A program made the position numbers and the translations under genes. Below, piece after piece: positions 453 to 63,692 of a stretch of 64,000 nt of DNA. Numbering within the stretch: the first letter of the stretch is position 1; each line of letters starts with the position of its first letter. Source of the stretch: Malacoraja senta. Lineage: Eukaryota. Below the pieces are notes generated by a model, which saw nothing but the letters and a program-made list of their open reading frames with translations, was not told the origin of the DNA and did not search any database. The stretch covers positions 434,001 to 498,000 of the forward strand of contig CM075999.1 of NCBI GenBank assembly GCA_038087875.1, written 5' to 3'.

Positions 453-2146
453 ATTTCAATGCGCAGCCCAATAACAATGGTGAGTTTATATCAAATGCAT
501 CAAACAATTGGATCACGTTACATTTGTTCTTCTCCATCTGTTGCTTAAACTGTGTAGAATTCCAGTAATGGGAAACAGTTTTTAAACTATTTGAAAATGT
601 TGGTACTTTAAACATGCTAAATTGCTTACTCTATTTCCACACTTCCAGTTCCAATCGAGGAAACAAATCCCATTAAATACAACGTGACTTTCATTGTTGA
701 CAACCTGTCTATAGAAGAAATTCAAGCAAACCCTTCAGAAACAGCAACCATGATTGCAATTGCGGTGAGAGAGTTTACCAATTAGTTTTCTGCTGATATA
801 TTCCTTCATTGTCCCCTTTTCATGTCTCATTCTAACACCATTTTTCTTGCCCTCAGCTCACAGACCTGTTTGAGAACAGCAATATCAATGCAACATTCTT
901 ACAATGTGATGCAAAATCATTCAGGTGAACTCACAATAACTTTCCGATTAAATCATGAAAATTGCATTCCATTGTCTCCAAATTTTTAAAGCATAGTGAT
1001 TCCACAGGGAGCAGTTGATTGGCAAATGCTTGCTGAAAATCCAGAGATTAAAAGACAAAAGGTTCAATATAGGGAGTTAGGCATAGAAGTCAAATTAATA
1101 ATGAAGCCAGAGGAAGCAAAGTGGAATGGGGGAATGGGGAGTGGGGAGAGATGGAGGGGAAAGGGAAAATGGGTGCACATTCAGCTGTAGCACAGGGAAG
1201 AGTGGGGGGAAATTGGGGGGGAGAGGGGGGGCATTTGTAGGTTGAAACGTTAAATTGAACAACTCATTGTTCATACAGTTACTTTGTAGGTTGTCACGTA
1301 GAATTATTCACATTGTTAGGCTCCAAACCTACACATCAGTTTATAAGTAAGAAAGAACTGCAGTTGCTGGAAAAATCGAAGGTAGACACAAAATGCTGGA
1401 GTAACGCAGCAGGTGAGGCAGCATCTCTAGAAAGAAGGAATGGGTGACGTTTCGGGCCGAAACCCTTCGAAGGGTCTTGACCTAAAATGTCACCCATTCC
1501 TTCTCTCCAGAGATACTGCCTCACCCGCTGAGTTACTCCAGCATTTTATGTCTACATATAATTATGAGGTGCTTTTCCTCCAGCTTAAATGTGGTTCCCC
1601 TCTGGCTATCGATGAGGCTCGACACAGACACGTCGTTATGGGAATGGGAAGGTTTGGGAGTTAAAATGTTTTGCAACCGGGAAATCCAGCAGACCTTTGT
1701 TGACCCTGCACCTGTTCGGAAATAATCTGTCACCTGGACGATGCTTAGCCTTGCTGATGTAAAGGAGACCACATCTAGAGCAGCAAATACAGGAGATGGG
1801 TTCAAAGACTGGTGCGTGAAATCCAAGAATGAGGGGAACTCTATCCTTGGTCAGCGTGGGTGAGGGGGATGCAAGAGCAGCCAATCAGCCACAGCAACAT
1901 TTCAGGTGTGCTCTTTCTAACATTGCTACTCCTTTGCACGAAATTATTTTTATAAATGTCATTTGCTTTTTTGCAGAGATGTAACGCACCAGTGCACCAG
2001 AGTGACAACTGATTGTTCATTCCAAAACGTGTCCACCATGGAACCCATCAAGCGAGAAGTGGTTTATGAAGTTATTAGAGTGAAGACCCATAACATTAAT
2101 GCACTGGAACAATTTGCATTGCAAAGTGACAGCCTCTATGTAGAAG
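453..2146 (+). CDS. SEA repeat 1 (type X, divergent variant)
   Basis: Exons 453-479, 649-764 (distal AG only), 857-924, 1977-2146; DFNAQPNNN-VPIEETNPIKYNVTFIVDNLSIEEIQANPSETATMIAIA-LTDLFENSNINATFLQCDAKSFR-DVTHQCTRVTTDC...SLYVE. Confidence 0.85.
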
Positions 2147-5100: not shown

Positions 5101-8100
5101 AAATGCAGTAGGTGGTGTTAGTGACTGGTGGGGTGTAAACTACGGATGGGGGGAACTCTATCTTTGCTCTGGACCAATACACCTGGACCATTTCCGACCA
5201 CTCAAATACACCTGGACCATTTCCGACCACTCAAATACACCTGGACCATTTCCGACCCTCCTCTCTATCTTTGCTCTGTCTGGGTGAGGGTGGTGTAAGA
5301 ACAGATCCCTCACTTGGGTGAGGGATCCATCTGAGAGCCAAGGCTAATCTACATTTACACTAGAAAGAGGCATCTTGGATGTCCTGGAATGGGAAGTCAC
5401 ATCGTGGTTGAAGATGGGGCTGAGACGGACAAATTAAGAGTCAGATTTCTCTAACCATTGCTTAGACACCAGTAATGAGCCACGGCAACATTTCAGCTGT
5501 GCTCTTGCTGGCACTGCAACCAACTTTGCACTAAATTATTTTACACTTATCACAAATCACTTTTGATATTTCGCAGAGAGGAAATGGTTAACAACGCCAA
5601 AGTGACAGCTAAATGTTCATTCCAAAACGTGTCCACCATGGAACCCATCAACCGAGAAAAGATTTACGCTGTATTTAGCGAGAAGACCAATGACATTTCC
5701 GCAATGGGGCCATACGTACTGCAAAGATACAGTCTCTATGTAAACGGTACTTATCAAAATTTCCTCGGTGTTTCTCTTCATATTGTACTTGTTCAATCTA
5801 TGGTAACTATTAATTTATAATCACGTTCTTTGGTATATACATATTTAGATCGGGGACAACCAGGTATGATATCCTATGGGATCTGACAAAGCAAAATCAT
5901 TCACAGTCTTGCTCTTCAGAGCCTGCCTTTGCACAAACACACTGCCACATTAGTATGACCCACTCACAAAAGGGTTTTCTTCCTTATAAATATTCAAGGA
6001 GCAGGTAAAAAAAACTCCTCCATTAAAAGGTTACATGCTTTTTTAGAAGAAACAGTGCTAGAGTAACTCAGTGGATCAGGCAGCATCACTGGAGAACGTG
6101 AATGGGTGACATTTCAGCCCGAAGTCCTTCTTCAGACTGATTGTGGGGTGGTGGGGGGAGAAGAAAGCTGTAAGAGAAGGGAGGCAGTACAAAGCATGTC
6201 AGTTAATAGGTGGACACGGGTGAGGTCGAGTTTAGATACGCAGAAGGTTGGACAAAGGGTAAAGATGAAAAAACATAAAGTGTGAGGGAAAAGGACTGAA
6301 GAGTTGCAAATTTGAAGTCAGAAAAAGGAACGTATATGGAGGACAAGGGGGAGGATGTTAATAGGTGTGTGCCCAGGTGGGACACAGTGTTGTTGTGGTT
6401 GGTGGGTTTTTAAAGTTTGCCTAAACTTGAAGATTTAAAGTTCTACCTCTATTTCTCTGTTTGTTTTCAGATTTCAATGTACAGCCCAATGTCAATGGTG
6501 AGTTTATATCAAATGCATCAAATAATTGACTCACGTTACATTTGTTCTTCTCCATCTGTTACTTAAACTGTAGAAATCCTGTCCTGGGAAACAGTTTTTA
6601 AATTATTTGAAAATCGTGGTACTCACACCATGCTAAATTGCTTACTCTACTTCCACAGTTCCAGTTCCAATCGAAGTAACAAAACCCATTAAATACAACG
6701 TGACTTTCATTGTTGACAATCTGCCTATTGAAGAAATTCAAGCAAAACCTTTAGAAACAGCAACCATGATTGCAAATAAGGTGAGAGAGTTTACCAATTA
6801 GTGTTCTGCTGATTTGTACATATTCATCCATTTTTATGTCTCATTCTAACACAATTTTTCTTGCCCTCAGCTCACAGACCTGTTTGAGAGCAGCAGTATC
6901 AATGCAACATTCTTAAAATGTGCCGTGAAATCATTCAGGTAACTTAAATCATGAAAATTGCATTCCTTTATCTCCAAATTGTTAATGCACAGTGATTCCA
7001 AATGGTAAAGATGATAATCTCATGAACACATTTCCTACAAATATCAATGCAAAGTCAATATAAATTCTAATACAAAAAGACATGATGTGCTGGATCATCT
7101 CAGCGGGTCAGTCGGCAAATCAGGAGAACATAGCTTGGCAGAGTTTTGGGTCGGGCCCTTCTTGAGACTGATTGCAGTACGGGGTGAGAAAGCTGCAAGA
7201 GAGGTGGAAAGGGAATGACACAGTGTGGCAAGTGATAGGAGGATACAAGTGATGGGGAGGGAGCAGTTGATTGGCAAATGCTTGCTGAAAATCCAGAGAT
7301 GAAAAGACAAAAGGTTCAATATAGGGAGTTCGGCATGGAAGTCAAAATAATTATGAAGCCAGAGGAAGCAAAGTGGAATGGGAGAATGGGGAGTGGGGAG
7401 GGATGGAGGGGAGTGGGAAAATGGGTGCACATTCAGCTGTAGCGCAGGGAAGAGTGGGGAGAAATTGGGGGGGAGAGGGGGGGCATTTGTAGGTTAAAAC
7501 GTTAAATTGAACAACTCAATGTTCATATAGTTACTTTGTAGGTTGTCACGTAGAATTATTCACATTGTTAGGCTCCAAACCTACACATCAGATTATGAGT
7601 AAGAAAGAACTGCAGATGCTGGTAAAATCGAAGGTAGATACAAAATGCTGGAGTAACGCAGCAGGTGAGGCAGCATCTCTAGAGAGAAGGAATGGGTGAC
7701 GTTTCAGGCCGAAACCCTTCAAAGGGTCTCGACCCAAGATGTCACCCATTCCTTCTCTCCAGAGATACTGCCTGTTGAGTTACTCCAGCATTTTGTGTCT
7801 ACATCTAATTATGAGGTGCTTTTCCTCCAGCTTAAATGTGGTTCCCCTCCGGCTATCGATGAGGCTCGACACAGACATGTCGTTATGGGAATGGGAAGGG
7901 GAGTTAAAATGTTTTGCAACCGGGAAATCGAGCAGACCTTGGTCAACCCTGCACCTGTTCGGAAAAAGAATGTCACCTAGACGATGTTTGGACTTGCCGC
8001 TGTAAAGGAGACCACATCTAGAGCAGCAAATACAGGAGATGGGTTTAGAGACTGGTGTGTGAAATCTAAGAATGAGGGGAGCTTTATCCTTCGTCAGCGT

Positions 8101-11100
8101 GGGTGAGGGGGATGCAAGAGCAGCCAATCAGCCACAGCAACATTTCAGCTGTGCTCTTTCTAACATTGCAACTACTTTGCACTAAATTCGTTTTATAAAT
8201 GTCTTTTGCTTTTTTGCAGAGAGGTAACGCACCAGAGCACCAGAGTGACAGCTGATTGTTCATTCCAAAACGTGTCCACCATGGAACCCATCAAGCGAGA
8301 AGTGGTTTATGAAGTAATTAGAGTGAAGACCCATAATATTACCGCACTGGGACAATTCCCATTGCAAAGTGACAGCTGCTATGTAGAAGGTACTTATCAA
8401 AATAATCCTCAATCTTTTTCTATATATTCTACTTCACGCTATATACTGTAGATGTTGAAGGAGTCAAGTCCTTTGGTAATTGCATATTCAGATCCGGGAG
8501 GATCAGGTATGATGTCCGACGGGCTTTGGGAAAGTGAATCTTAAAGTCATTCATTAAAGTCATCCTCACACACAGGAGGGAGAAATAGATGGGAATCCAG
8601 TTGGGGCACAGGAGAGGGACGTGGGGTGGGTGCGATTTGTTTGAGGTTACTTAAAATTGGAAAACTCAAAGTTCATCCTGTTGGTGTAAACTGCCTATGT
8701 TTGTTTCTTTGCTTCCAGGTTACACTGTGCCACCCGTTGTCATTGGTGAGTTTGGGCTTCCATTGAATTGTTTCGGGTTTCTTTGGTTATTCACTGCTTT
8801 CATGACACAGCCAGCACCCATATTCTGCAAGAATATTTGTTGAAACTCATGAAATGATGCCTTGCCCTTTGCTCACAAATACAATCTTGATTGAGAAATG
8901 AATTAATTGAAAACTTTCCTTGCTGTCGCAAGTTTTTTTTTAACAAAATCAATTTTGATACCGATTTCTCAGCCAAAGCTAGATACAATCCACCAATTTT
9001 CCAGTCGACATCTTGTGCTAAATTTCACTCAAATGTATCAAACAATTGCCTCAGATCACATTTGTTCTTTTTGATCTGTTGCTAAGCTGCAACAAATTCC
9101 ATTACAGGGAAACAGTTGTTAAACTATTGAAATATCGTGGTACTTGCAGCATGCTAAATTACTTCCTCTATTTCCACAATTCCAGTCAAGGAATCAAAAC
9201 CCACTACTTACAACGTGACGTTCATTGTTGACAGTCTGTCTATTGAAGAAATTCAAGCCAACCCCTCACAAACAGCAACCATGATTGCATCTGAGGTGAG
9301 AGAGTTTACAAGTTAGTTTACTGATGATGTTTTACTTCATAGTACCCTTTATATTTCTCATTCTGACTCAATTATTGTTACTGCCTTCAGCTCACCGACC
9401 TGTTCGAAAATAGCAGTATCAATGCTACATTCTGGAGATGTGTTGTGGAATCCTTCAGGTAACTCAAAATAACATTCCTATTAAATGATAAATACCGGAT
9501 CCTTTAATTTCCAATTGTTAACGCTTAATAATTCCACTTTGCAAACGCATGAATCTCATAAGTAAATTTCCCACAAATATCATGTAGAATAAATTCTACC
9601 AGAAAAAGACACAATGTATTGGAGTCTCCTGGTGAGTCACGCAGCAAATCTGTAAAACCTGGCGAGGCACAGTTTTAGGTCAGGCCTTCCTCCAGACTTC
9701 GCAGTAGGGATGAGAAAGCTGGAAGAGGGGCGTGAAAGGGGTGACAAAGTGTAGCAAGTGATAAGAGGATTCAGGTGAGAGGGGTGGGGGATTTGATTGA
9801 CAAATGGTTGAACAAAATCCGGAGATGAAAAATAAGAGGTTTAATAGAGACAGAAAGCTTTGAAGAGGCATAAGATATAAAGCTGGATGAAGGAAGAAAG
9901 TGGAAGGGGAGAACTAAAGGGTGGGATGCGGAGAGGAAAGGAAGAAATGGGTACACCTAGGGTGGAGACGCCAGGTGTAGCCGTGTGCGGAAGTGGCGTC
10001 AAAGGACGAGAAGCCGAAGCAAAGAAGTGGAAGCCAAATAACCGAATGGAAATGAAGCCGAAATGCCAAATAGCCGAAAGCATACAAAGCTGAAACGCCA
10101 ACTAACCAAAAGGATGGGACGCCTAAAAGCAAACTAACCGAAAGGGCGGGACGCCTAAAAGCCAACTAACCAAAAGGCTGCATCGCCTTAAAGCAAACTC
10201 ACAGAATGGCCGCTCCGCCGAAACACCACCTACCCGAAAGGCTGCGTCGCCTACAAGCCAACGAACTGAATGCCGCTCAACAGAAAAGTCAAATAATGGA
10301 CATGACGTTGATGGGGGACGGGACCTGTCAGCGATTGGTCCAGACCCCCACATCCATCACATCACTGGCTGGTGGAGAAAGAGTGTGTGGGTCAATTAAC
10401 CACACAAGCCATAGGTGAGTGGGCAATCTGAACCCAAGCACCAAGTCGAAAGCGGCCGAATGTGCGCATCCCTCGGGTCAGCCCCCACTCTCCTACGCGC
10501 ACAGCCGCCCTCCGCCTCGTCTCCCCTGTGCACCCGACCCCGCAGCCCGTCACAGTGCAGCCGCACGGGGGAAACGAGGCGGAGGGCGGCCGTGGCCGTG
10601 GTATTGTGGCGGTTGTTCTGAGCGATGCGCAACTCTGGTTGCTTACAACTTGGTGCTTGGGTTCAGATTGCCCAGTCACCTATGGCTTGTGTGGGAAAAT
10701 GACCCCCACCCTCCCATCTCCACCGGCCAGTGATGTGATGGACGCTGGGGTCTGGACCAATCGCTGACAAGTCCCGCCCTCCAGCAACATCATGTCCGTT
10801 ATTTGACTTTTCTGTTGAGCGGCATTCGGTTGGTTGGCTTGTAGGTGACGCAGCCTTTCGGGTAGGTGGCGTTTCGGTAGAGCGGCATTCAGTGAGTTTG
10901 CTTTCAGGCGACGCAGCCTTTCATTTAGTTGGATTTTAGGCGTCCCACCCTTTCGGTTAGTTTGCTTTTAGGTATCCCACCCTTTCGGTTAGTTGCCATT
11001 TCGGCTTCGTACGCTTTCGGCTATTTGGTGTTTCGGCTTTATTTCCATTCGGTTATTTGGCTTCCACTTCTTTGCTTCGGCTTCTCGTTCTTCGACGCCG

Positions 11101-53100: not shown

Positions 53101-56100
53101 GGGACAATATCCATTGCAAAGCGACAGCCTCCATGTAGAAGGTACTTATCAAAATAATCCTCAATTTTTTTCTATGTATTCTTTTACATGCAATCTACCG
53201 TAGATGTTGACGGAGTCACGTCCTTTGGTAATTACATATTCAGATCCGGGAGGATCAGGTATGATGTCCGATGGGCTTTGGGAAAGTGAATCTTGAAGTC
53301 ATTCATGAAAGTCATCCTGACTAACAGGAGGGAGAAATAGGCGCGAGTCCAGTTGGGTCACCGGAGAGGGAGGTGGGGTGGGGTGCGATTTGTCCGAGGA
53401 TACCTAAAATTGGAAAACTCAAAGTTCATACTGTTGAATGTAAACTGTCTTTGTTTGTTTCTTTGCTTCCAGGTTACACTGTGCCACCCGTTGTCATTGG
53501 TGAGTTTGGGCTTCCATTGAATTGTTTCGGGTTTCTTTGTTTATTCACTGCTTTCATGACTCATCCAGCACCCATATTCTGCAAGAATATTCGTTGAAAC
53601 TCGTGAAATGATGCCTTGCCCTTTGCTCACAAATACAATCTTGATTGAGAAATGAATGAATTGAAAACTTTCCTTGCTGTTCGCAAGGTATTTTTTAACA
53701 AAAGCAATTTTGATACCGATTTCTCTGCCAAAGCTAGATACAATCCACAAATTTTCCAGTCGACATCTTGTGCAGAATTTCGCTCAAATGTATCAAACAA
53801 TTGCCTCAGATCACATTTGTTTTTTTGAGGTGTTGCTCAACTGCGTCAAATTCCATTACAGGGAAACAGTTGTTAAACTATTGAAATATCGTGGTACTTG
53901 CAGCATGCTAAATTACTTCCTCTATTTCCACAGTTCCAGTCGAGGAATCAAATCCCACTACTTACAACGTGATGTTCATTGTTGACAGTCTGTCTATTGA
54001 AGAAATTCAAGACAACCCCTCACAAACAGCAACCATGATTGCATCTGAGGTGAGAGAGTTTACAAGTTAGTTTACTGATGATGTTTTACTTCATCGTACC
54101 CTTTTTATTTCTCATTCTGACTCAATTATTGTTACTGCCTTCAGCTCACCGACCTGTTCGAAAATAGCAGTATCAACACTACATTCTTGACATGTGTTGT
54201 GGAATCCTTCAGGTAACTCAAAATAACTTTCCTATTAAATGATAAAAAAACCATCCTTTAATTTCCAATTGTTAACGCTCAATAATTCCAATTTGCAAAC
54301 GCATTAAACTCATAAGTAAATTTCCCACAAATATCACGTAGAATTAATATAAATTCTACCAGAAAAAAGCACATTGTACTGGAGTCTCCTGGTGAGTCAG
54401 GCAGCAAATCTGTAAACCCTGGCGAGGCAAAGTTTTGTAGTAGGGGGGTCCAGTCGTCAGTTTTTTGGTGACCTGTTACGACTATGACAGTCGCCGGCAG
54501 TCGCCGAAAATATCGCTTAAGTGGGACAGGCCCATATTGCTCTAAGCTACTCCTCGGAATATGAGGTGCTGTTCCTCCAGTTTAAGTGTGGCCTCACTCT
54601 GGAAATGGATGAGGCCCAGGACAGGCAGTTCGGTTTGGGAAAGGAAAGGGGAGTTAAATTGTTTTTGAACCGGGATTTCCAGCAGACCTTGGCCGACTGC
54701 ATGGGTTCGGCGAAAAAGTCACCTAGACACTGTTTGGTCTTGCTAACGTATAGGACACCACATAAGGTGCATCAAATGCAGTAGCTGGTGTTAGTGACAG
54801 GTGGGGTGTAAACTAAGGATGAGGGGAACTCTATCCTTTCTCCGTCTGGGTGAGAGTGATGTGAGAGCAGATCTAGAGGAGATTCGGGTAAGGGATCCAT
54901 CTAAAACAGCCAAGGCTAATCTACTGTTACATTAGAAAGATTACATCTTGGATGTCCTAGAATGGGAAGTCACATCATGGGTGAAGATGGGGCGGAGACG
55001 GACAAATTGAGTCGGATTGCTCCGAACATTGCTTAGACACCAGTAATGAGCCACGGCAACATTTCAGCTGTGCTCTTGCTGGCACTTCAAACATCTTTGC
55101 ACTAAATTATTTTGCACTAAATGTCTTTTGCTTTTTCGCAGAGAGGAAATGGTTAACAGCACCAGAGTGACAGCTAAATGTTCATTCCAAAACGTGTCCA
55201 CCATGGAACCCATCAACCGAGAAGATGTTTATGATGTATTTAGGGAGAAGACCGATGACATTTCCTCACTGGGGCCATACGAACTGCAAAGCTACAGCCT
55301 CTATGTAGACGGTACTTATCAAAATATTCCTTGGTATTTCTCTTCATATTGTATTTGTGCAATCTACGGTAACTATTGATTTATAGTCAAGTTCCTTGGT
55401 ATTTACATATTTAGATCAGGAACAACCAGGCATGATATCCTATAGGATCTGAGAAAGCAAACCTTAAAATCATTCACAGTCTTGCTCTTCGGAGCCTGCC
55501 TTTGCACAAACACACTGCCTCATTGGTATGACCCACTCTCAAAAGCGTTTTCTTCCTGATAAATGTTCAAGGAGAGGTAAAAAAAATACCCCATTAAAAA
55601 GTTACATGCTTTTTTAGAAGAATTAAAGTGCTAGAGTAACTCAGCGGGTCAGGCAGCATCACTGGAGAACGTGAATGGGTGACATTTCAGCCCGAGATCC
55701 TTCTTCAGACTGATTGTGGGGTGGTGGGGGGAGAAGAAAGCTGGAAGAGAAGGGCGGCAGTACAAAGCAAGTCATTAATAGGTGAACACACGTGAAGTAG
55801 AGTTTGGATACACAGAAGGTTGGACAAAGGGTAGAGACAAAAAAAACATAAGGGGTCAGGGAAAAGGATTGTAGAGATGCAAATTTGAAGCCAGAAAAAG
55901 GAATGTAGATGGAGGGCAAGGGGGAGGAGTTTCATCGGTGCGTGCCCAGGTGTTGTTGTGGTTGATGGGTTTTTAAAGGTTGCCTAAACTTGAACATTTA
56001 AAGGTCTACCTATATTTCTCTGTTTGTTTTCAGATTTCAATGTACAGCCCAATGTCAATGGTGAGTTTGTATCAAATGCATCAAACAATTGGCACATGTT

Positions 56101-59100
56101 ACATTTGTTCTTCTCCATCTATTGTATAAACTTTGTAGAAATCCAGTCCTGGGAAACAATTTTTAAACTCTTTGAAAATCGTGGTACTCACAACATGCTA
56201 AATTGCTTATTCTATTTCCACAGTTCCAGTTCCAATCGAGGTAACAAATCCCATTGAATACAACGTGACTTTCATTGTTGACAATCTGTCTATTGACGAA
56301 ATTCAAGCAAACCCTTCAGAAACAGAAACCATGATTGCAAATGAGGTGAGAGAGTTTACCAATTAGTTTTCTGCTGATATGGTACTTATTTGTCCCCTTT
56401 TTATGTCTCATTCTAACACCATTTTTCTTGCCCTCAGCTCACAGACCTGTTTGAGAACAGCAGTATCAATGCAACATTCTTAAAATGTGCTGTGAAATCA
56501 TTCAGGTAACTTACAATATCTTTCTGATTAAATCATGAAAATTGCATTCCTTTGTCTCCAAATTGTTAATGCACAGTGATTCCAAATGGTAAAATGATAT
56601 TCCCATAAACACATTTTCTACAAATATCAGTGCAAAGTCAATATAAATTCTAACAGAAAAAGACACAATGCAGAGAGACAGATGAACTCTGTCTTCAACC
56701 CTTGCAGCTGGCTGGTGATCATAGCAAGGGTAGGTGCCGGGATTCACCAGGAGGTGAAATGTGTGGGAAGGAATGGCAGATGTTGGTTTACACCGAAGAT
56801 AGACACAAAATGCTGGAGTAACTCAGTGGGACAGGCAGCATCTCTGGAAAGAAGGATAGAAGGATGGGAAACATCTCCCATTCCTTCTATTCGGAGATGC
56901 TGCCTGTCCCGCTTCTATCTTCAGGATTCACCAGTAACGAGGCTTGAGTCAACCAAATAAGATAAAAAATCTTTCAACTGAAGTCACGATTACAGTAATG
57001 GCGATTTCAGGGAAAAGAGCAATCTTCACAAAAGAAGTGAGATACTGACCACAACGGGTTATTAATTGGGGACGATCAGCCATGATCACAATGAATGGCG
57101 GTGCTGGCTAGAAGGGCCGAATGGCCTCCTCCTTCACCTATTTTCTATGTTTCTATGTTTCTATGATGTGCTCGAGTATCTCAGCGGGTCCGTCGGCATA
57201 TCTGGAGAACATGGCTTGGCAGAGTTTTGGGTTGGGCCCTTCTCAGACTGATTGCAGTCGGGGTGAGAAAGCTGCAAGAGAGGTGGAAAGGGGATGACAA
57301 CGTGTGGCAAGTGATGCGAGGATATAAGTGATGGGGAGGGTGCAGTTGATTGGCAAATGGTTGCTGAAATCTCCAGAGATGAAAAGACAAAAGGTTCAAT
57401 ACAGGGAATTAGGCGTAGAAGTCAAATTAATTATGAAAGTTGATGAAGCATAGTGGAAGGGGAGAATGGAGGGAGGGGACGGGTGGAAGGGAAAGCAGAA
57501 AATGGGTGCATATTCAGGTGTAGCACAGGGAAGAGTCGGGGGAAATTGATGGGGAAGGGGGGCATTTGTAGGTTGACACGTAAAATTGAACAACTCATTT
57601 TTCATACAGTTAGTTTGTAGGTCACGTAAAATTATTCATTTTGTTAGGCTCCAAACATACACATCAGATTATGAGGTGCTTTTCCTCCAGCTTAAATGTG
57701 GTCTCCCACTGGCTATCGATCAGGCTCGACACAGACACGTCGATATGGGAATGGGAAGGGGAGTTAAAATCTTTTGCAACCGGGAAACCCAGCAGACCTT
57801 GGTCGACCCTGCACCTGTGCGGAAAAAAATGGTCACCTAGACGATGCTGGGACTTGCCGATATAAAGGAGACCACATCTAGAGCAGCAAATGCAGGAGAT
57901 GGGTTTTGAGACTGGTGTGTGAATTTTAAGAATGAGGGGCACTCTCTCCTGGGTCAGTCTGGGTGAAGGGGATGCAAGAGCAGAAATATAGGAGACGTGG
58001 GTGAGGGATCCATCTGATACAGCACAGGGTAATCCACGTCTACTAAAAAAAGGACAAATCAGATGCCTAGAATGGGAAAGCATCATGGAATCAGATGCGA
58101 CGGAGATGAATAAACTGAGTATTGGATTTCTCTGACAATTACTTCTACCGCTGTAAAAAGCCACAGCAACATTTCAGATGTGCTCTTTCTAACATTGCAA
58201 CTACTTTGCACTAAATTATTTTTATAAATGTCTTTTGCTTTTTTGCAGAGAGGTCATGGCTAACAGCACCAGAGTGACAGCTGATTGTTCATTCCAAAAT
58301 GTATCCACCATGGAACCCATCAAGCAAGAAGTGGTTTATGATGTATTTAGAGAGAGGACCCATAACATTACTGCACTGGGACAATATCCATTGCAAAGCG
58401 ACAGCCTCCATGTAGAAGGTACTTATCAAAATAATCCTCAATTTTTTTCTATGTATTCTTTTACATGCAATCTACCGTAGATGTTGACGGAGTCACGTCC
58501 TTTGATAATTACATATTCAGATCCGGGAGGATCAGGTATGATGTCCGATGGGCTTTGGGAAAGTGAATCTTGAAGTCATTCATGAAAGTCATCCTGACTA
58601 ACAGGAGGGAGAAATAGGCACGAGTCCAGTTGGGTCACCGGAGAGGGAGGTGGGGTGGGGTGCGATTTGTCCGAGGATACCTAAAATTGGAAAACTCAAA
58701 GTTCATACTGTTGAATGTAAACTGTCTTTGTTTGTTTCTTTGCTTCCAGGTTACACAATGCAGCCCGTTGTCATTGGTGAGTTTGGGCTTCCATTGAATT
58801 GTTTCGGGTTTCTTTGTTTATTCACTGCTTTCATGACTCATCCAGCACCCATATTCTGCAAGAATATTCGTTGAAACTCGTGAAATGATGCCTTGCCCTT
58901 TGCTCACAAATACAATCTTGATTGAGAAATGAATGAATTGAAAACTTTCCTTGCTGTTCGCAAGGTATTTTTTAACAAAAGCAATTTTGATACCGATTTC
59001 TCTGCCAAAGCTAGATACAATCCACAAATTTTCCAGTCGACATCTTGTGCAGAATTTCACTCAAATGTATCAAACAATTGCCTCAGATCACATTTGTTTT

Positions 59101-62100
59101 TTTGTGGTGTTGCTCAACTGCGTCAAATTCCATTACAGGGAAACAGTTGTTAAACTATTGAAATATCGTGGTACTTGCAGCATGCTAAATTACTTCCTCT
59201 ATTTCCACAGTTCCAGTCGAGGAATCAAATCCCACTACTTACAACGTGATGTTCATTGTTGACAGTCTGTCTATTGAAGAAATTCAAGACAACCCCTTAC
59301 AAACAGCAACCATGATTGCATCTGAGGTGAGAGAGTTTACAAGTTAGTTTACTGATGATGTTTTACTTCATCGTACCCTTTTTATTTCTCATTCTGACTC
59401 AATTATTGTTACTGCCTTCAGCTCACCGACCTGTTCGAAAATAGCAGTATCAATACTACATTCTTGACATGTGTTGTGGAATCCTTCAGGTAACTCAAAA
59501 TAACTTTCCTATTAAATGATAAAAAAAACCATCCTTTAATTTCCAATTGTTAACGCTCAATAATTCCAATTTGCAAACGCATTAAACTCATAAGCAAATT
59601 TCCCACAAATATCACGTAGAATTAATATAAATTCTACCAGAAAAAAGCACCATGTACTGGAGTCTCCTGGTGAGTCAGGCAGCAAATCTGTAAACCCTGG
59701 CGAGGCAAAGTTTTGTAGTAGGGGGGTCCAGTCGTCAGTTTTTTGGTGACCTGCTACGACTATGACAGTCGCCGGCAGTCGCCGAAAATATCGCTTAAGT
59801 GGGACAGGCCCATATTGCTCTAAGCTACTCCTCGGAATATGAGGTGCTGTTCCTCCAGTTTAAGTGTGGCCTCACTCTGGAAATGGATGAGGCCCAGGAC
59901 AGACAGTTCGGTTTGGGAAAGGAAAGGGGAGTTAAATTGTTTTTGAACCGGGATTTCCAGCAGACCTTGGCCGATTAGACGGGTTCGGCGAAAAAGTCAC
60001 CAAGACACTGTTTGGTCTTGCTAACATATAGGACAACACATAAGGTGCATCAAATGCAGTAGCTGGTGTTAGTGACAGGTGGGGTGTAAACTAAGGATGA
60101 GGGGAACTCTATCCTTGCTCCGTCTGGGTGAGAGTGATGTGAGAGCAGATCTAGAGGAGATTCGGGTAAGGGATCCATATAAAACAGCCAAGGCTAATCT
60201 ACTGTTACATTAGAAAGATTACATCTTGGATGTCCTAGAATGGGAAGTCACATCGTGGGTGAAGATGGGGCAGAGACGGACAAATTGAGTCGGATTGCTC
60301 TGAACATTGCTTAGACACCAGTAATGAGCCACGGCAACATTTCAGCTGTGCTCTTGCTGGCACTTCAAACATCTTTGCACTAAATTATTTTGCACTAAAT
60401 GTCTTTTGCTTTTTCGCAGAGAGGAAATGGTTAACAGCACCAGAGTGACAGCTAAATGTTCATTCCAAAACGTGTCCACCATGGAACCCATCAACCGAGA
60501 AGATGTTTATGATGTATTTAGGGAGAAGACCGATGACATTTCCTCACTGGGGCCATACGAACTGCAAAGCTACAGCCTCTATGTAGACGGTACTTGTCAA
60601 AATATTCCTTGGTGTTTCTCTTCATATTGTATTTGTGCAATCTACGGTAACTATTGATTTATAGTCAAGTTCCTTGGTATTTACATATTTAGATCAGGAA
60701 CAACCAGGCATGATATCCTATAGGATCTGAGAAAGCAAACATTAAAATCAGTCACAGTCTTGCTCTTCGGAGCCTGCCTTTGCACAAACACACTGCCTCA
60801 TTGGTATGACCTACTCTCAAAAGGGTTTACTTCCTGATAAATGTTCAAGGAGAGGTAAAAAAAATACCCCATTAAAAAGTTACATGCTTTTTTAGAAGAA
60901 TTATTGTGCTAGTGTAACTCACGGATAAGGCAGCATCACTGGAGAACGTGAATGGGTGACATTTCAGCCCGAGATCCTTCTTCAGACTGATTGTGCGGTG
61001 GAGGGGGGAGAAGAAAGCTGGAAGAGAAGGGAGGCAGTACAAAGCAAGTCATTAATAGGTGAACACAGGTGAAGTAGAGTTTGGATACACAGAAGGTTGG
61101 ACAAAGGCCAGAGACGAAAAAACATAAGGGGTCAGGGAAAAGGATTGTAGAGATGCAAATTTGAAGCCAGAAAAAGGAATGTAGATGGAGGGCAAGGGGA
61201 AGGAGTTTCATCGTGCGTGCCCAGGTGTTGTTGTGGTTGATGGGTTTTTAAAGGTTGCCTAAACTTGAACATTTAAAGTTCTACCTATATTTCTCTGTTT
61301 GTTTTCAGATTTCAATGTACAGCCCAATGTCAATGGTGAGTTTTTATCAAATGCATCAAACAATTGGCACATGTTACATTTGTTCTTCTCCATCTATTGT
61401 ATAAACTTTGTAGAAATCCAGTCCTGGGAAACAGTTTTTAAACTCTTTGAAAATCGTGGTACTCACAACATGCTAAATTGCTTACTCTATTTCCACAGTT
61501 CCAGTTCCAATCGAGGTAACAAATCCCATTGAATACAACGTGACTTTCATTGTTGACAATCTGTCTATTGAAGAAATTCAAGCAAACCCTTCAGAAACAG
61601 AAACCATGATTGCAAATGAGGTGAGAGAGATTACCAATTAGTTTACTGCTGATATGGTACTTATTTGTCCCCTTTTTATGTCTCATTCTAACACCATTTT
61701 TCTTGCCCTCAGCTCACAGACCTGTTTGAGAACAGCAGTATCAATGCAACATTCTTAAAATGTGCTGTGAAATCATTCAGGTAACTTACAATATCTTTCT
61801 GATTAAATCATGAAAATTGCATTCCTTTGTCTCCAAATTGTTAATGCACAGTGATTCCAAATGGTAAAGATGATATTCCCATAAACACATTTCCTACAAA
61901 TATCAGTGCAAAGTCAATATAAATTCTAACAGAAAAAGACACGATGCAGAAAGACAGATGAACTCTGTCTTCAACCCTTGCAGCTGGCTGGTGATCATAG
62001 CAAGGGTAGGTGCCGGGATTCACCAGGAGGTGAAATGTGTGGGAAGGAATGGCAGATGTTGGTTTACACCGAAGATAGACACAAAATGCTGGAGTAACTC

Positions 62101-63692
62101 AGTGGGACAGGCAGCATCTCTGGAAAGTAAGGATAGAAGGATGGGAAACATCTCCCATTCCTTCTATTCGGAGATGCTGCCTGTCCCGCTTCTATCTTCA
62201 GGATTCACCAGTAACCAGGCTTGAGTCGACCAAATAAGATAAAAAATCTTTCAACTGGTCACTATTACAGTAATGGCGATTTCAGGGAAAAGAGCAATCT
62301 TCACAAAAGAAGTGAGATACTGACCACAACGGGTTATTGATTGGGGACGATCAGCCGTGATCACAATGAATGGCGGTGCTGGCTAGAAGGGCCGAATGGC
62401 CTCCTCCTTCACCTATTTTCTATGTTTCTATGTTTCTATGATGTGCTCGAGTATCTCAGCGGGTCCGTCGGCATATCTGGAGAACATGGCTTGGCAGAGT
62501 TTTGGGTTGGGCCCTTCTCAGACTGATTGCAGTCGGGGTGAGAAAGCTGCAAGAGAGGTGGAAAGGGGATGACAACGTGTGGCAAGTGATGCGAGGATAT
62601 AAGTGATGGGGAGGGTGCAGTTGATTGGCAAATGGTTGCTGAAATCTCCAGAGATGAAAAGACAAAAGGTTCAATACAGGGAATTAGGCGTAGAAGTCAA
62701 ATTAATTATGAAAGTTGAGGAAGCATAGTGGAAGGGGAGAATGGAGGGAGGGGACGGGTGGAAGGGAAAGCGGAAAATGGGTGCATATTCAGGTGTAGCA
62801 CAGGGAAGAGTCAGGGAAATTGATGGGGAAGGGGGGCATTTGTAGGTTGACATGTAAAATTGAACAACTCATTTTTCATACAGTTAGTTTGTAGGTCACG
62901 TAAAATTATTCATATTGTTAGGCTCCAAACATACACATCAGATTATGAGGTGCTTTTCCTCCAGCTTAAATGTGGTCTCCCACTGGCTATCGATCAGGCT
63001 CGACACAGACACGTCGACATGGGAATGGGAAGGGGAGTTAAAATGTTTTGCAACCGGGAAACCCAGCAGACCTTGGTCGACCCTGCACCTGTGCGGAAAA
63101 AAATGGTCACCTAGACGATGCTGGGACTTGCCGATATAAAGGAGACCACATCTAGAGCAGCAAATGCAGGAGATGGGTTTAGAGACTGGTGTGTGAATTT
63201 TAAGAATGAGGGGCACTCTCTCCTGGGTCAGTCTGGGTGAAGGGGATGCAAGAGCAGAAATATAGGAGACGTGGGTGAGGGATCCATCTGAGACAGCACA
63301 GGGTAATCCACATCTACTAAAAAAAGGACAAATCAGATGCCTAGAATGGGAAAGCATCATGGAATCAGATGCGACGGAGATGAATAAACTGAGTATTGGA
63401 TTTCTCTGACAATTACTTCTACCGCTGTAAAAAGCCACAGCAACATTTCAGGTGTGCTCTTTCTAACATTGCAACTACTTTGCACTAATTTCTTTTGATA
63501 AATGTCTTTTGCTTTTTTGCAGAGAGGTCATGGCTAACAGTACCAGAGTGACAGCTGATTGTTCATTCCAAAATATATCCACCATGGAACCCATCAAGCA
63601 AGAAGTGGTTTATGATGTATTTAGAGAGAGGACCCATAACATTACTGCACTGGGACAATATCCATTGCAAAGCGACAGCCTCCATGTAGAAG
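453..63692 (+). CDS. MUC16-like: Internal part of a giant tandem SEA-domain (MUC16-like) glycoprotein gene: 92 exons, 23 SEA repeats, ~2,937 aa, open at both ends
   Basis: Repeated GT-AG exons of 27/110-122/68/170 nt with compatible phases splice into one frame. Translation such as YNVTFIVDNL...LTDLFENSSINATFLKCAVKSFR...C...INREKIYAVFSEKTNDISAMGPYVLQRYSLYVN resembles the MUC16 SEA repeat as I recall it (FTLNFTITNL...LKPLFKNTSVGPLYSGCRLTLLR...C...LNREQLYWELSKLTNDIEELGPYTLDRNSLYVNG), including the Cys pair. Orthology is not proven. Confidence 0.88.
1348..1553. mobile_element. Inverted (palindromic) Penelope-like terminal fragment, copy 1
   Basis: ~85-bp arms centred on ACCCTTC|GAAGGGT (1468/1469), inserted in the GIY-YIG relic. 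Confidence 0.75.
2477..5746 (+). CDS. SEA repeat 2 (type Y, family 1)
   Basis: Exons 2477-2503, 2939-3054, 3150-3217, 5577-5746; GYTVPPVVI-VPVKESKPTTYNVTFIVDSL...-LTDLFENSSINATFWRCVVESFR-EEMVNNAKVTAKC...SLYVN. Confidence 0.87.
3748..4865. mobile_element. 1.1-kb foldback (long-palindrome, non-autonomous DNA-transposon-like) element, copy 1
   Basis: The left end CGGAAGTGGCGTCAAAGGACGAGAAGCCGAAGC is the near reverse complement of the right end GCTTCGGCTTCTCGTTCTTCGACGCCACATCCG. The arms pair for ~460 bp, with an inner stem at ~4264-4291/4322-4349. Subterminal CCGAA-rich short repeats; no transposase; no clear TSD. Confidence 0.8.
4884..5440 (-). mobile_element. Paralogous Penelope-like GIY-YIG relic in the Y intron (representative)
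   Basis: TATGAGGT..TTC.TCCAGTTT.AGTGTGGCCTCACTCTGG...GGGAATGGGAAGGGGAG aligns with the X-intron relic; the minus frame gives TYCICSTV. Its terminal part is at ~3377-3730. Present in all 11 Y introns, e.g. 28190-28670. Confidence 0.8.
5172..5262 (+). repeat. 29-bp minisatellite x3 inserted with a 16-bp target duplication
   Basis: Unit AAATACACCTGGACCATTTCCGACCACTC (anchors at 5181, 5210, 5239); flanked by CTCTATCTTTGCTCTG at 5156-5171 and 5263-5278; absent from the other units. Confidence 0.9.
6055..6445 (-). mobile_element. Penelope-like 3' terminal fragment with a hammerhead-like core, in the intron before each X micro-exon (representative)
   Basis: GTGCT(A/G)GAGTAACTCAG..GTCAGGCAGCATC..TGGAGAAC...GTGACATTTC...CCTTCTTCAGACTG. 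Also near 69-425, 12190, 18350, 24433, 29285, 34552, 39830, 45104, 50360, 55628 and 60906. Confidence 0.7.
6471..8389 (+). CDS. SEA repeat 3 (X, family 1)
   Basis: Exons 6471-6497, 6659-6780, 6871-6938, 8220-8389. Confidence 0.87.
7600..7800. mobile_element. Inverted Penelope-like terminal fragment, copy 2
   Basis: Flanked by ACATCAGATTATGAG (7585-7599) and ACATCTAATTATGAG (7801-7815), a TSD-like duplication; family 2 shows the empty site. Confidence 0.75.
8719..11880 (+). CDS. SEA repeat 4 (Y, family 1)
   Basis: Exons 8719-8745, 9186-9295 (distal AG only), 9391-9458, 11711-11880. Confidence 0.85.
9988..11106. mobile_element. Foldback element, copy 2
   Basis: Homologous position and sequence to copy 1. 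Confidence 0.8.
12602..14548 (+). CDS. SEA repeat 5 (X, family 1)
   Basis: Exons 12602-12628, 12790-12911, 13005-13072, 14379-14548. Confidence 0.87.
13751..13956. mobile_element. Inverted Penelope-like terminal fragment, copy 3
   Basis: Same structure as copies 1-2. Confidence 0.75.
14879..18040 (+). CDS. SEA repeat 6 (Y, family 1)
   Basis: Exons 14879-14905, 15346-15455 (distal AG only), 15551-15618, 17871-18040. Confidence 0.85.
16148..17266. mobile_element. Foldback element, copy 3
   Basis: Nearly identical to copy 2 (offset 6160). Confidence 0.8.
18766..20712 (+). CDS. SEA repeat 7 (X, family 1)
   Basis: Exons 18766-18792, 18954-19075, 19169-19236, 20543-20712. Confidence 0.87.
19915..20120. 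mobile_element. Inverted Penelope-like terminal fragment, copy 4
   Basis: Same structure as copies 1-2. Confidence 0.75.
21043..24122 (+). CDS. SEA repeat 8 (Y, family 1)
   Basis: Exons 21043-21069, 21511-21620 (distal AG only), 21716-21783, 23953-24122. Confidence 0.85.
22313..23349. mobile_element. Foldback element, copy 4 (81-bp deletion in the right arm)
   Basis: 1037 bp versus 1118 bp; deletion at ~23229 between CTTTC microhomologies. Confidence 0.8.
24848..26791 (+). CDS. SEA repeat 9 (X, family 1/family 2 chimera)
   Basis: Exons 24848-24874, 25036-25157, 25251-25318 (family 1 sequence) and 26622-26791 (family 2 sequence, EVMANSTRV...). Confidence 0.87.
25993..26198. mobile_element. 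Inverted Penelope-like terminal fragment, copy 5
   Basis: Same structure as copies 1-2. Confidence 0.75.
27123..28968 (+). CDS. SEA repeat 10 (Y, family 2)
   Basis: Exons 27123-27149, 27584-27699, 27795-27862, 28799-28968. Confidence 0.87.
28090..28184. mobile_element. Truncated end of a PIF/Harbinger-like MITE (family 2 Y introns)
   Basis: Ends AAGTGGGACAGGCCC (reverse complement GGGCCTGTCCCACTT) with internal GTCGCC repeats; other copies end at 33457, 38735, 44008, 49264, 54533 and 59811. The superfamily call is from memory of the terminal motif. Confidence 0.55.
29690..32064 (+). CDS. SEA repeat 11 (X, family 2)
   Basis: Exons 29690-29716, 29880-30001, 30094-30161, 31895-32064. Confidence 0.87.
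30328..30822 (+). mobile_element. Composite ~495-bp insertion in family 2 X introns: unknown 5' part, Penelope-like end with a small hairpin, CR1-type 3' tail
   Basis: Ends GAAGGGCCGAATGGCCTCCTCC...(TTTCTATG)x3; family 1 shows the empty site ACATGATGTGCTGG. Other copies start near 35595, 40871, 46137, 51402, 56671 and 61947. Confidence 0.7.
32396..34235 (+). CDS. SEA repeat 12 (Y, family 2)
   Basis: Exons 32396-32422, 32857-32972, 33068-33135, 34066-34235. Confidence 0.87.
34958..37342 (+). CDS. SEA repeat 13 (X, family 2)
   Basis: Exons 34958-34984, 35148-35269, 35362-35429, 37173-37342. Confidence 0.87.
36090..37040 (-). mobile_element. Degenerate 5'-truncated Penelope-like retroelement (GIY-YIG endonuclease C-terminus plus 3' terminal region); representative X-intron copy
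   Basis: Minus ORF 36588-37088 contains ISCICCSRCGLLYIGKSQHRLGDHFFPHRCRVDQG...PVAKDFNSPSHS...KLEEKHLI, a CxxC-LYIG GIY-YIG pattern with catalytic-region decay. The relic is in every X intron, near 1.0-1.9, 7.1-8.1, 13.2-14.3, 19.4-20.4, 25.5-26.5, 30.8-31.8, 41.4-42.3, 46.6-47.6, 51.9-52.8, 57.2-58.1 and 62.4-63.4 kb. Confidence 0.85.
37674..39513 (+). CDS. SEA repeat 14 (Y, family 2)
   Basis: Exons 37674-37700, 38135-38250, 38346-38413, 39344-39513. Confidence 0.87.
40233..42616 (+). CDS. SEA repeat 15 (X, family 2)
   Basis: Exons 40233-40259, 40423-40544, 40637-40704, 42447-42616. Confidence 0.87.
42948..44786 (+). CDS. SEA repeat 16 (Y, family 2)
   Basis: Exons 42948-42974, 43409-43524, 43620-43687, 44617-44786. 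Confidence 0.87.
45499..47872 (+). CDS. SEA repeat 17 (X, family 2)
   Basis: Exons 45499-45525, 45689-45810, 45903-45970, 47703-47872. Confidence 0.87.
48204..50042 (+). CDS. SEA repeat 18 (Y, family 2)
   Basis: Exons 48204-48230, 48665-48780, 48876-48943, 49873-50042. Confidence 0.87.
50765..53141 (+). CDS. SEA repeat 19 (X, family 2)
   Basis: Exons 50765-50791, 50955-51076, 51169-51236, 52972-53141. Confidence 0.87.
53473..55311 (+). CDS. SEA repeat 20 (Y, family 2, with a family 1-type micro-exon)
   Basis: Exons 53473-53499, 53934-54049, 54145-54212, 55142-55311. Confidence 0.87.
56034..58418 (+). CDS. SEA repeat 21 (X, family 2)
   Basis: Exons 56034-56060, 56224-56345, 56438-56505, 58249-58418. 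Confidence 0.87.
58750..60589 (+). CDS. SEA repeat 22 (Y, family 2)
   Basis: Exons 58750-58776, 59211-59326, 59422-59489, 60420-60589. Confidence 0.87.
61309..63692 (+). CDS. SEA repeat 23 (X, family 2)
   Basis: Exons 61309-61335, 61499-61620, 61713-61780, 63523-63692; the next micro-exon is expected just beyond the window end. Confidence 0.87.

What the first reader, a model, noticed from the sequence alone, without database searches (positions are those of the whole stretch)
453..63692. Hidden giant 'SEA-only' MUC16-like protein: at least 23 SEA domains in strict X-Y alternation with no PTS spacers
Seen: 92 exons with intact splice sites and frame encode 127-129 aa repeats, each joined by a 27-nt micro-exon (GYT[VP/MQ]PVVI or DFNVQPNVN) plus a short Pro/Val stretch. 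Known: human MUC16 repeats are 156 aa, with a Ser/Thr-rich spacer and a Cys-bounded loop. Its LKPLF...LLR and ...SLYVNG segments match the 68-nt and 170-nt exons here; the latter is one codon shorter, giving 18 rather than 19 residues between the Cys. Inference: this is a non-mammalian MUC16-type gene that independently expanded a heterodimeric SEA unit into a beads-on-a-string rod of ~3,000 aa or more. It would rely on N-glycans rather than O-glycans in this region. Automated annotation could easily mask it as a satellite.
Basis: partly seen in the sequence, partly recalled or inferred. Interest (0 to 1): 0.85.

Follow-up and report, generated by a model that had tools for sequence, protein, structure and literature searches.

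The report
Skate MUC16-like SEA-domain repeat array
The whole 64-kb window is the middle of a skate gene related to the human surface mucin MUC16 (CA125), built from 23 intact copies of one small folded domain; the description is accurate, but the gene family is already labelled "mucin-16-like" in related rays and sharks, so this is a clear example of a known kind.

Summary
The window carries 23 four-exon units (27 + 116 or 110 + 68 + 170 nt). All 92 exons have AG/GT borders, share one frame and contain no stop, giving 2,915 aa. The DFN-type and GYT-type micro-exons alternate strictly.

The units are MUC16-type SEA domains. Four results support this: PDB profile hits only to MUC16 SEA, a profile of rodent MUC16 repeats that hits all 23 units, Pfam SEA on 85-91% identical skate orthologues, and an AlphaFold model whose best structural matches are MUC16 SEA. 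The 68-nt and 170/173-nt exons and their phases are the same in Anolis mucin-16.

The protein is neither "SEA-only" nor unknown. Orthologous models in Amblyraja, Leucoraja, Pristis and Hemitrygon are named mucin-16-like. They add a signal peptide, an N-terminal PTS region, and a transmembrane segment and tail that resemble mammalian MUC16.

The X-Y alternation reflects a two-unit block amplified in this genome (6.1-kb and 5.27-kb block families). It is not a conserved heterodimer, because relatives amplified one-, two- or four-to-five-unit blocks. Short, Ser/Thr-poor linkers are real, but all ray copies of this gene share them and bichirs have similarly compact repeats.

In Leucoraja the annotation does under-call the array. 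Verdict: new member of a known kind, of modest interest.

The parts
453..5746 (+). Block H0 (family I): unit 0 (X) + unit 1 (Y)
   Evidence: Exons 453-479, 649-764, 857-924, 1977-2146; 2477-2503, 2939-3054, 3150-3217, 5577-5746
6471..11880 (+). Block H1 (family I): units 2 (X), 3 (Y)
   Evidence: Exons 6471-6497, 6665-6780, 6871-6938, 8220-8389; 8719-8745, 9186-9295 (110 nt, shifted acceptor), 9391-9458, 11711-11880
12602..18040 (+). Block H2 (family I): units 4, 5
   Evidence: Exons 12602-12628, 12796-12911, 13005-13072, 14379-14548; 14879-14905, 15346-15455 (110 nt), 15551-15618, 17871-18040
18766..24122 (+). Block H3 (family I): units 6, 7
   Evidence: Exons 18766-18792, 18960-19075, 19169-19236, 20543-20712; 21043-21069, 21511-21620 (110 nt), 21716-21783, 23953-24122
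24848..28968 (+). Block H4 (hybrid of families I and II, 4.84 kb): units 8, 9
   Evidence: Exons 24848-24874, 25042-25157, 25251-25318, 26622-26791; 27123-27149, 27584-27699, 27795-27862, 28799-28968; 92% identical to family I, 95% to family II
29690..34235 (+). Block H5 (family II, 5.27 kb): units 10, 11
   Evidence: Exons 29690-29716, 29886-30001, 30094-30161, 31895-32064; 32396-32422, 32857-32972, 33068-33135, 34066-34235
34958..39513 (+). Block H6 (family II): units 12, 13
   Evidence: Exons 34958-34984, 35154-35269, 35362-35429, 37173-37342; 37674-37700, 38135-38250, 38346-38413, 39344-39513
40233..44786 (+). Block H7 (family II): units 14, 15
   Evidence: Exons 40233-40259, 40429-40544, 40637-40704, 42447-42616; 42948-42974, 43409-43524, 43620-43687, 44617-44786
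45499..50042 (+). Block H8 (family II): units 16, 17
   Evidence: Exons 45499-45525, 45695-45810, 45903-45970, 47703-47872; 48204-48230, 48665-48780, 48876-48943, 49873-50042
50765..55311 (+). Block H9 (family II): units 18, 19
   Evidence: Exons 50765-50791, 50961-51076, 51169-51236, 52972-53141; 53473-53499, 53934-54049, 54145-54212, 55142-55311
56034..60589 (+). Block H10 (family II): units 20, 21
   Evidence: Exons 56034-56060, 56230-56345, 56438-56505, 58249-58418; 58750-58776, 59211-59326, 59422-59489, 60420-60589; 99.9% identical to H6
61309..63692 (+). First half of block H11 (family II): unit 22 (X); array runs off the window
   Evidence: Exons 61309-61335, 61505-61620, 61713-61780, 63523-63692

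Best explanation
The window is an internal stretch of a skate orthologue of the elasmobranch 'mucin-16-like' gene, here called paralogue A. This is a type I membrane glycoprotein of the MUC16 family. Each 125-127-aa unit has a 17-19-residue linker rich in Val, Pro and Asn (the 27-nt micro-exon plus the start of the next exon) followed by a SEA domain of about 108 residues with one conserved Cys pair. The 23 units would form a long chain of independently folded, heavily N-glycosylated domains (113 N-x-S/T sites; 7 per X unit and 4 per Y unit in block family II). This chain would lie between an N-terminal O-glycosylated PTS region and a membrane anchor; both of those are seen only in orthologues, outside this window. 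The array grew by unequal crossing-over of a two-unit genomic block, which produced the X-Y alternation. Two block families exist (about 6.1 kb, four copies; 5.27 kb, at least six and a half copies) with one hybrid block at their junction. Shown: exon structure, SEA/MUC16 homology, fold, block structure, and selection against frame-breaking indels. Inferred: expression, glycosylation, membrane anchoring in this genome, and a barrier or glycocalyx role on epithelia by analogy with MUC16.
For: Exon model. MUC16-type SEA: the exon-C profile hits only MUC16 SEA chains among solved structures (8vm1 1.5e-6, 8gkl, 7sa9, 1ivz). An exhaustive search of 1.84 billion proteins gives 115 hits, and all 20 whose names were looked up are mucin-16, MUC16 or mucin-16-like; nearly all named hits of the two word-index searches are too. 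A profile of Chinchilla and Dipodomys MUC16 repeats hits all 23 spliced units at 47-56 bits. Pfam SEA is found 23 times in Amblyraja XP_032902719.1, whose units are 76-91% identical to the window's (85-91% for most). An AF2 model of the Leucoraja X-Y pair (about 87% identical to block family II) gives two beta-alpha-beta-beta-alpha-beta domains, and the top five Foldseek matches are MUC16 SEA, TM 0.72-0.75 for four of them. In Anolis mucin-16 the 68-nt phase-0 exon and the 173-nt exon ending in phase 1 sit at the same positions. Orthologue architecture and the shared TM/tail motif (LP[FY]WAII......G[IY]Y[YF][SP]HLD) run from skate to mammal. Block families. Exons have 0 indel runs against 14, 19 and 42 in introns, with about 2.4, 2.6 and 5.2 expected in exons.
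Against: No transcript data could be consulted. Constraint on amino-acid sequence is weak: dN/dS is 0.4-1.8 between paralogous units, 0.77 pooled, and 0.62 against the Leucoraja block. Many copies are so recent (98-99.9% identical) that intact frames in them prove little. Pfam SEA could not be run on the window's own spliced units, because a spliced sequence has no reference; single exons give no Pfam hit. The signal peptide, PTS, TM and tail are seen only in other species. Copy number in so uniform an array may be mis-assembled.
Confidence: 0.85

Rival explanations
1. The array is a recently amplified, no longer expressed (or only partly used) segment: dead exon copies preserved only because they are young.
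For: dN/dS is near 0.6-0.8, and above 1 for Y units. Exon and intron substitution levels are similar. Block copies are 98-99.9% identical. The NCBI models in Leucoraja use only 3.5 of about 19 units in one gene span.
Against: There are no stops, frameshifts or lost splice sites in 92 exons, even across the 10% divergence between block families and the 24-34% synonymous divergence between X and Y. Exons carry no indels while introns carry many. The one lost acceptor is replaced in frame. The same 127-aa design persists in Pristis, Hemitrygon and Mobula at 46-56% identity.
Confidence: 0.08
2. X and Y form an obligate structural or functional heterodimeric module, so the alternation is selected.
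For: Alternation is perfect over 23 units. X and Y differ consistently, in the linker micro-exon and in 7 versus 4 N-glycan sites. X-type units have counterparts in Amblyraja and Leucoraja, so the X type predates the species split; Y-type (GYT-linker) units are also present in both species.
Against: Alternation follows directly from amplifying a two-unit DNA block whose introns are equally conserved. The Amblyraja model has runs of up to nine DFN-type units. Leucoraja amplified a 2.23-kb single unit, Pristis a 4-5-unit block, and Hemitrygon one unit. AF2 gives no confident inter-domain packing: linker pLDDT is below 50 and pTM is 0.48.
Confidence: 0.05
3. The repeat belongs to another SEA-bearing family (agrin, perlecan, IMPG, UMODL1, MUC1/3/12/13/17), not MUC16.
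For: No outgroup SEA families were placed in the tree. The Pfam SEA score per unit in the closest orthologue is modest, about 24 bits.
Against: Only MUC16 chains are hit among all solved SEA structures. Every database relative whose name was looked up is called mucin-16 or MUC16, as are nearly all. Intron positions and phases are shared with Anolis mucin-16. The TM and tail motifs are shared with mammalian MUC16.
Confidence: 0.02

Closest known systems
Skate and ray 'mucin-16-like' gene models, paralogue A (Amblyraja radiata XP_032902719.1; Leucoraja erinacea XP_055514215/514607/514609/514610; Pristis pectinata XP_051893943.1; Hemitrygon akajei; Mobula hypostoma)
   Same: Same unit (127-129 aa), the same DFN/GYT-type linkers in the skates, the same Cys pair, and 85-91% best-unit identity to the skates for most units (76-77% for the family I Y units). 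The DNA, introns included, is 88-91% identical to the Leucoraja locus.
   Different: This window has a strict two-unit block amplified at least 11.5 times; the relatives amplified other block sizes. No protein from the window's own genome turned up in the collections searched.
Mammalian MUC16 / CA125
   Same: A tandem SEA array, a conserved Cys loop, the closing SLYVNG-type motif, and the repeat exon structure (shown for Anolis mucin-16). Orthologues share the PTS N-terminus, the TM and the YY.HLD tail.
   Different: The period is 127 aa against 154-156. Linker Ser+Thr is 13% against 33-36%. The Cys loop is one residue shorter. Identity is about 25-30%. The window alone holds 23 units, against the 19 repeats of the revised human model (PMC10829539).
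Elasmobranch MUC16-like paralogue B (Amblyraja XP_032902718.1, Chiloscyllium XP models)
   Same: The same family and overall architecture. It is probably adjacent to paralogue A in Amblyraja: same 34.66-Mb contig and consecutive accession numbers; adjacency was not checked directly.
   Different: Period 140-142 aa, with a Thr-rich mini-PTS linker of the GYNEPSPTTTISPIQTTTP type and stronger Pfam SEA scores. Its units form a separate clade.
Bichir MUC16-like proteins (Polypterus, Erpetoichthys)
   Same: A compact SEA array with a 124-aa period, so short spacers are not unique to rays.
   Different: A separate clade, with linker Ser+Thr at 25%.

Membership tests
SEA domain (Pfam PF01390) | Significant match to the SEA profile | tested here: met
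   Indirect for the window: Pfam SEA is found 23 times in P0116 (543 bits), 7 times in P0004 and 3 times in P0012. These units are 76-91% identical to the window's. Direct test: a profile of rodent MUC16 SEA repeats hits all 23 spliced units at 47-56 bits. Single exons alone give no Pfam hit.
SEA domain (Pfam PF01390) | Alpha/beta sandwich fold (beta-alpha-beta-beta-alpha-beta) | tested here: met
   AF2 model of the Leucoraja orthologous X-Y pair, domains at pLDDT 80-91. The Foldseek top five are MUC16 SEA, four with TM 0.72-0.75 (8vm1, a fusion chain, 0.53) and rmsd 2.4-4.1 A. The model is of an orthologue, not of the window's own sequence.
SEA domain (Pfam PF01390) | G/SVVV autoproteolysis site (present only in some SEA domains) | tested here: not met
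   No GSVVV-like motif in any of the 23 units. A GSVKV/GSVIV motif occurs only in the membrane-proximal SEA of orthologues. It is not required for family membership.
MUC16 | Many tandem SEA domains in one polypeptide | tested here: met
   23 in-frame units in the window.
MUC16 | Repeat-specific sequence signature (Cys loop, closing SLYVNG-type motif), nearest to MUC16 rather than to other SEA families | tested here: met
   No explicit outgroup tree was made.
MUC16 | Repeat exon structure (68-nt phase-0 exon ending two bases into a codon, then a roughly 170-nt exon ending in phase 1) | tested here: met
   Anolis carolinensis mucin-16 locus L002: exons of 68 nt and 173 nt with the same borders. 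Human sequence was not consulted.
MUC16 | Ser/Thr/Pro-rich O-glycosylated spacer inside every repeat | tested here: not met
   The linker is 17-19 aa, with V 21%, P 16%, N 12%, T 10% and S 3%. Ser+Thr is 0.13 against 0.33-0.36 in mammals.
MUC16 | N-terminal PTS mucin domain, single TM, and a short tail with the conserved motif | not testable with these tools
   These lie outside the window. They are present in orthologues P0019, P0116, P0131 (signal + PTS) and P0118, P0001, P0131 (TM + tail), and are shared with mammals, Anolis and lungfish.
MUC16 | Conserved synteny with the tetrapod MUC16 locus | not tested
   The window holds only the array, and no flanking genes were available.

The most novel reading that the evidence does not exclude
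Rays and skates carry a second MUC16 gene (paralogue A) that has replaced the O-glycosylated spacers of its repeats with short Val/Pro linkers. It builds its stalk from dozens of N-glycosylated SEA domains, more than the 19 repeats of the revised human model. The array is re-amplified independently in each species from blocks of different size. Because whole units are frame-neutral, unit skipping may tune stalk length: the Pristis isoform models differ by exactly 127 aa.
Probability: 0.35. Interest if true: 0.45.

Novelty: new member of a known kind. Interest (0 to 1): 0.3.

Why it matters
The window gives a clean, fully intact example of how a MUC16-type stalk grows, by unequal crossing-over of multi-exon blocks. 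It also shows that the Ser/Thr-rich spacer of mammalian CA125 repeats is not a fixed feature of the family: repeat periods range from 110 to 157 aa across vertebrates. Practically, gene models in such arrays are badly under-called: in Leucoraja one 41-kb gene span with about 19 intact units is modelled as 443 aa. Mucin inventories of cartilaginous fishes drawn from automated annotation will therefore underestimate these proteins. None of this changes current understanding of mucins.

Tried and rejected
- Pfam on single exons by reference gave no SEA hit because the pieces are too short. I did not type the spliced 127-aa units into any tool, so a direct Pfam scan and a direct fold of the window's own units were not run. 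I used orthologue proteins by id and local profiles instead.
- The Amblyraja locus DNA could not be fetched because the gene range is 127 kb. I therefore cannot rule out that the window is an unmodelled part of that genome. The window does not coincide with the Leucoraja stretch fetched (L001), which it matches at only 88-91%.
- No protein from the window's own genome appeared in two database searches, so its annotation status is unknown.
- Literature searches found no paper on MUC16 in cartilaginous fishes. The 2016 mucin survey (PMC4948705) does not treat MUC16.
- A recurring 166-aa minus-strand ORF in X-unit introns has no Pfam match.
- timed out and was redone. One search did nothing.
- A heterodimer reading of X-Y was considered and rejected.

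Full report
**What is in the window.** The sequence is eukaryotic, about 42-46% GC, with no N. A search for AG + 27 nt + GT read in phase 1 finds 23 micro-exons between 453 and 61335. They alternate without exception between DFN(A/V)QPN(N/V)N and GYT(VP/MQ)P(V/I)VI. Between successive micro-exons, a template-guided search finds one exon of 116 nt (110 nt in units 3, 5 and 7), one of 68 nt and one of 170 nt.

All 92 exons have AG/GT borders, and every 170-nt exon ends in the G that starts the next codon. The joined product is 8,745 nt = 2,915 aa without a stop. In units 3, 5 and 7 the usual acceptor has mutated from AG to AA, and the next AG 6 nt downstream keeps the frame. Units are therefore 125-127 aa, not 127-129. 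The first exon lies 452 nt from the window start and the last ends 308 nt before its end, so the array very probably continues on both sides.

**Genomic organisation.** The DNA repeat is a two-unit block.
- Blocks H0-H3 are 6.0-6.2 kb long and 96-99% identical to each other (family I).
- Blocks H5-H10 are 5.27 kb long and 98-99.9% identical (family II).
- The two families are about 89.5% identical to each other.
- H4 (4.84 kb) is a hybrid: 92% identical to family I and 95% to family II.

The strict X-Y alternation is therefore what amplifying a two-unit block produces.

Exons and introns have diverged by similar amounts: variable sites are 1.8% versus 3.3%, 5.1% versus 4.8%, and 8.6% versus 10.4% in the three alignments. 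Indels differ sharply. Exons carry none, while introns carry 14, 19 and 42 indel runs, with about 2.4, 2.6 and 5.2 expected in exons at equal density. dN/dS is high: 0.4-1.8 between paralogous units, 0.77 pooled, and 0.62 against the orthologous Leucoraja block at dS 0.106. The reading frame is protected, but the amino-acid sequence is only weakly constrained.

**What the units are.**
- Single exons are too short for Pfam.
- A profile of the 56-aa exon-C product hits only MUC16 SEA chains among all solved structures: 8vm1 at 1.5e-6, 8gkl, 7sa9, and weakly 1ivz.
- The same profile, run against 1.84 billion representative proteins, finds 115 proteins. Most have many matched stretches.
- All 20 hits whose names were looked up are mucin-16, MUC16 or mucin-16-like, from skates, rays, sharks, bichirs, lungfish, a turtle, a lizard and rodents. 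Nearly all named hits of the two word-index searches are as well.
- A profile built only from Chinchilla and Dipodomys MUC16 repeats hits each of the 23 spliced window units at 47-56 bits over profile positions 23-112.
- Pfam SEA is found 23 times in Amblyraja radiata XP_032902719.1 (P0116) and in the Leucoraja models. Their units are 76-91% identical to the window's.
- An AlphaFold2 model of the Leucoraja X-Y pair (P0117:166-421, about 87% identical to family II, 98-row alignment) gives two beta-alpha-beta-beta-alpha-beta domains at pLDDT 80-91. They are joined by linkers below pLDDT 50, and pTM is 0.48.
- The five best Foldseek matches in the PDB are MUC16 SEA domains, four with TM 0.72-0.75 and sequence identity 26-30% across the five. 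SEA domains of membrane proteases follow.
- In the Anolis mucin-16 locus (L002) the homologous repeat exons are 68 nt and 173 nt, with the same borders and phases.

**The whole gene, from orthologues.**
- Leucoraja erinacea has four consecutive models on one chromosome; the gene table of locus L001 shows the first three side by side.
  - P0019 carries a signal peptide, a PTS region and three SEA units.
  - P0012 and P0004 contain only SEA units, and both end in intron read-through.
  - P0118 carries SEA units, a GSV.V-type unit, a TM segment and a tail.
- Amblyraja P0116 has the same signal peptide, more than 400 aa of PTS, and 23 SEA units. A further SEA-bearing model follows it.
- Pristis and Hemitrygon models run through to the same TM and tail.
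- The TM start (LP[FY]WAII) and the tail end (G[IY]Y[YF][SP]HLD) recur in rodent, Anolis and lungfish MUC16.

The protein family is thus a membrane mucin with a PTS head, not a SEA-only protein. The window is its repeat core.

A second paralogue is probably adjacent in Amblyraja (P0002; same contig, consecutive accession). It has 140-aa repeats with a Thr-rich linker. In a FastTree of 171 units, all skate A units form one clade (62 rows, support 99) and all ray A units form a clade of 89 (99). That clade is joined by shark A units (92). Paralogue B units and bony-vertebrate units lie apart. Repeats thus group by lineage, as expected from independent expansion or homogenisation.

**Is the design unusual?** Repeat periods across the family form a continuum from 110 to 157 aa:

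| Lineage | Period (aa) | Linker Ser+Thr |
|---|---|---|
| Bichirs | 124 | 25% |
| Ray paralogue A | 127-129 | 10-16% |
| Lungfish, turtle | 137 | about 25% |
| Paralogue B | 140-142 | about 30% |
| Mammals | 154-156 | 33-36% |

The window's linkers are V/P/N-rich with two or three Thr each. The units carry 113 N-glycosylation sequons in all. The Ser/Thr-poor linker is real, but all ray copies share it.

Strict X-Y alternation is not shared:
- The Amblyraja model has runs of up to nine DFN-type units.
- Leucoraja amplified a 2.23-kb single unit about 15 times.
- Pristis shows a 4-5-unit block.
- Mobula shows a two-unit block of its own.
- Hemitrygon shows a single repeated unit.

Together with the flexible-linker model, this argues against a selected heterodimeric module.

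**Annotation and literature.** The family is recognised by NCBI's pipeline in many elasmobranchs, so it is not hidden as a kind. In Leucoraja the 41-kb span of the 443-aa model contains about 19 intact units, of which 3.5 are used. No protein of the window's own genome appeared in the collections searched. The window differs from the Leucoraja stretch by 9-12% at the DNA level. It is a skate genome, according to earlier scan notes and these relatives; the species was not determined. I found no paper on MUC16 of cartilaginous fishes. Chicken Muc16 with PTS plus at least four SEA domains is in PMC1552070, and the 19-repeat human model is in PMC10829539.

**Verdict.** This is a new member of a known kind, of modest interest.

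Noticed in passing
window 3748-4865 (and the equivalent intron of units 3, 5, 7): A roughly 1.1-kb foldback palindrome (arms 221 nt at 90% and 173 nt at 87% complementary, nested). It lies in the intron between the 68-nt and 170-nt exons of family I Y units and accounts for much of the extra length of family I blocks. It contains the 64-nt tandem repeats seen at 10092-10278 and 16253-16437.
   Followed up: partly
window 1376-1556: A short hairpin-forming interspersed element (a ...gctggagtaac.cagc... motif on both arms) inside an X-unit intron. A partial copy lies at 70-130. It looks like a common elasmobranch SINE/MITE-type repeat.
   Followed up: no
window 36588-37088, 41862-42362, 57664-58164, 62938-63438 (minus strand): A recurring 166-aa open frame in the long intron of family II X units. 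It has no Pfam match and is probably chance or a decayed element.
   Followed up: partly
window 34958-40232 versus 56034-61308: Blocks H6 and H10 are 99.9% identical, while their neighbours are 98-99% identical. This points to very recent gene conversion or duplication, or to an assembly effect.
   Followed up: no
L001 (Leucoraja erinacea CM054035.1:12612582-12673959), 18600-50000: About 15 near-identical 2.23-kb single SEA units with intact reading frames lie inside the span of the 443-aa gene model and are not part of it. Models P0012 and P0004 end in intron read-through (...GTYQNI...).
   Followed up: partly
Pristis pectinata isoform models: Isoform lengths of 3440, 3567, 3694 and 3821 aa differ by exactly 127 aa, one unit. 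This is either real unit skipping or an artefact of aligning reads to repeats.
   Followed up: no
window units 0, 2, 4, 6: Extra unpaired Cys residues: position 77 in unit 0, and position 124 (DSCYVE) in units 2, 4 and 6.
   Followed up: no
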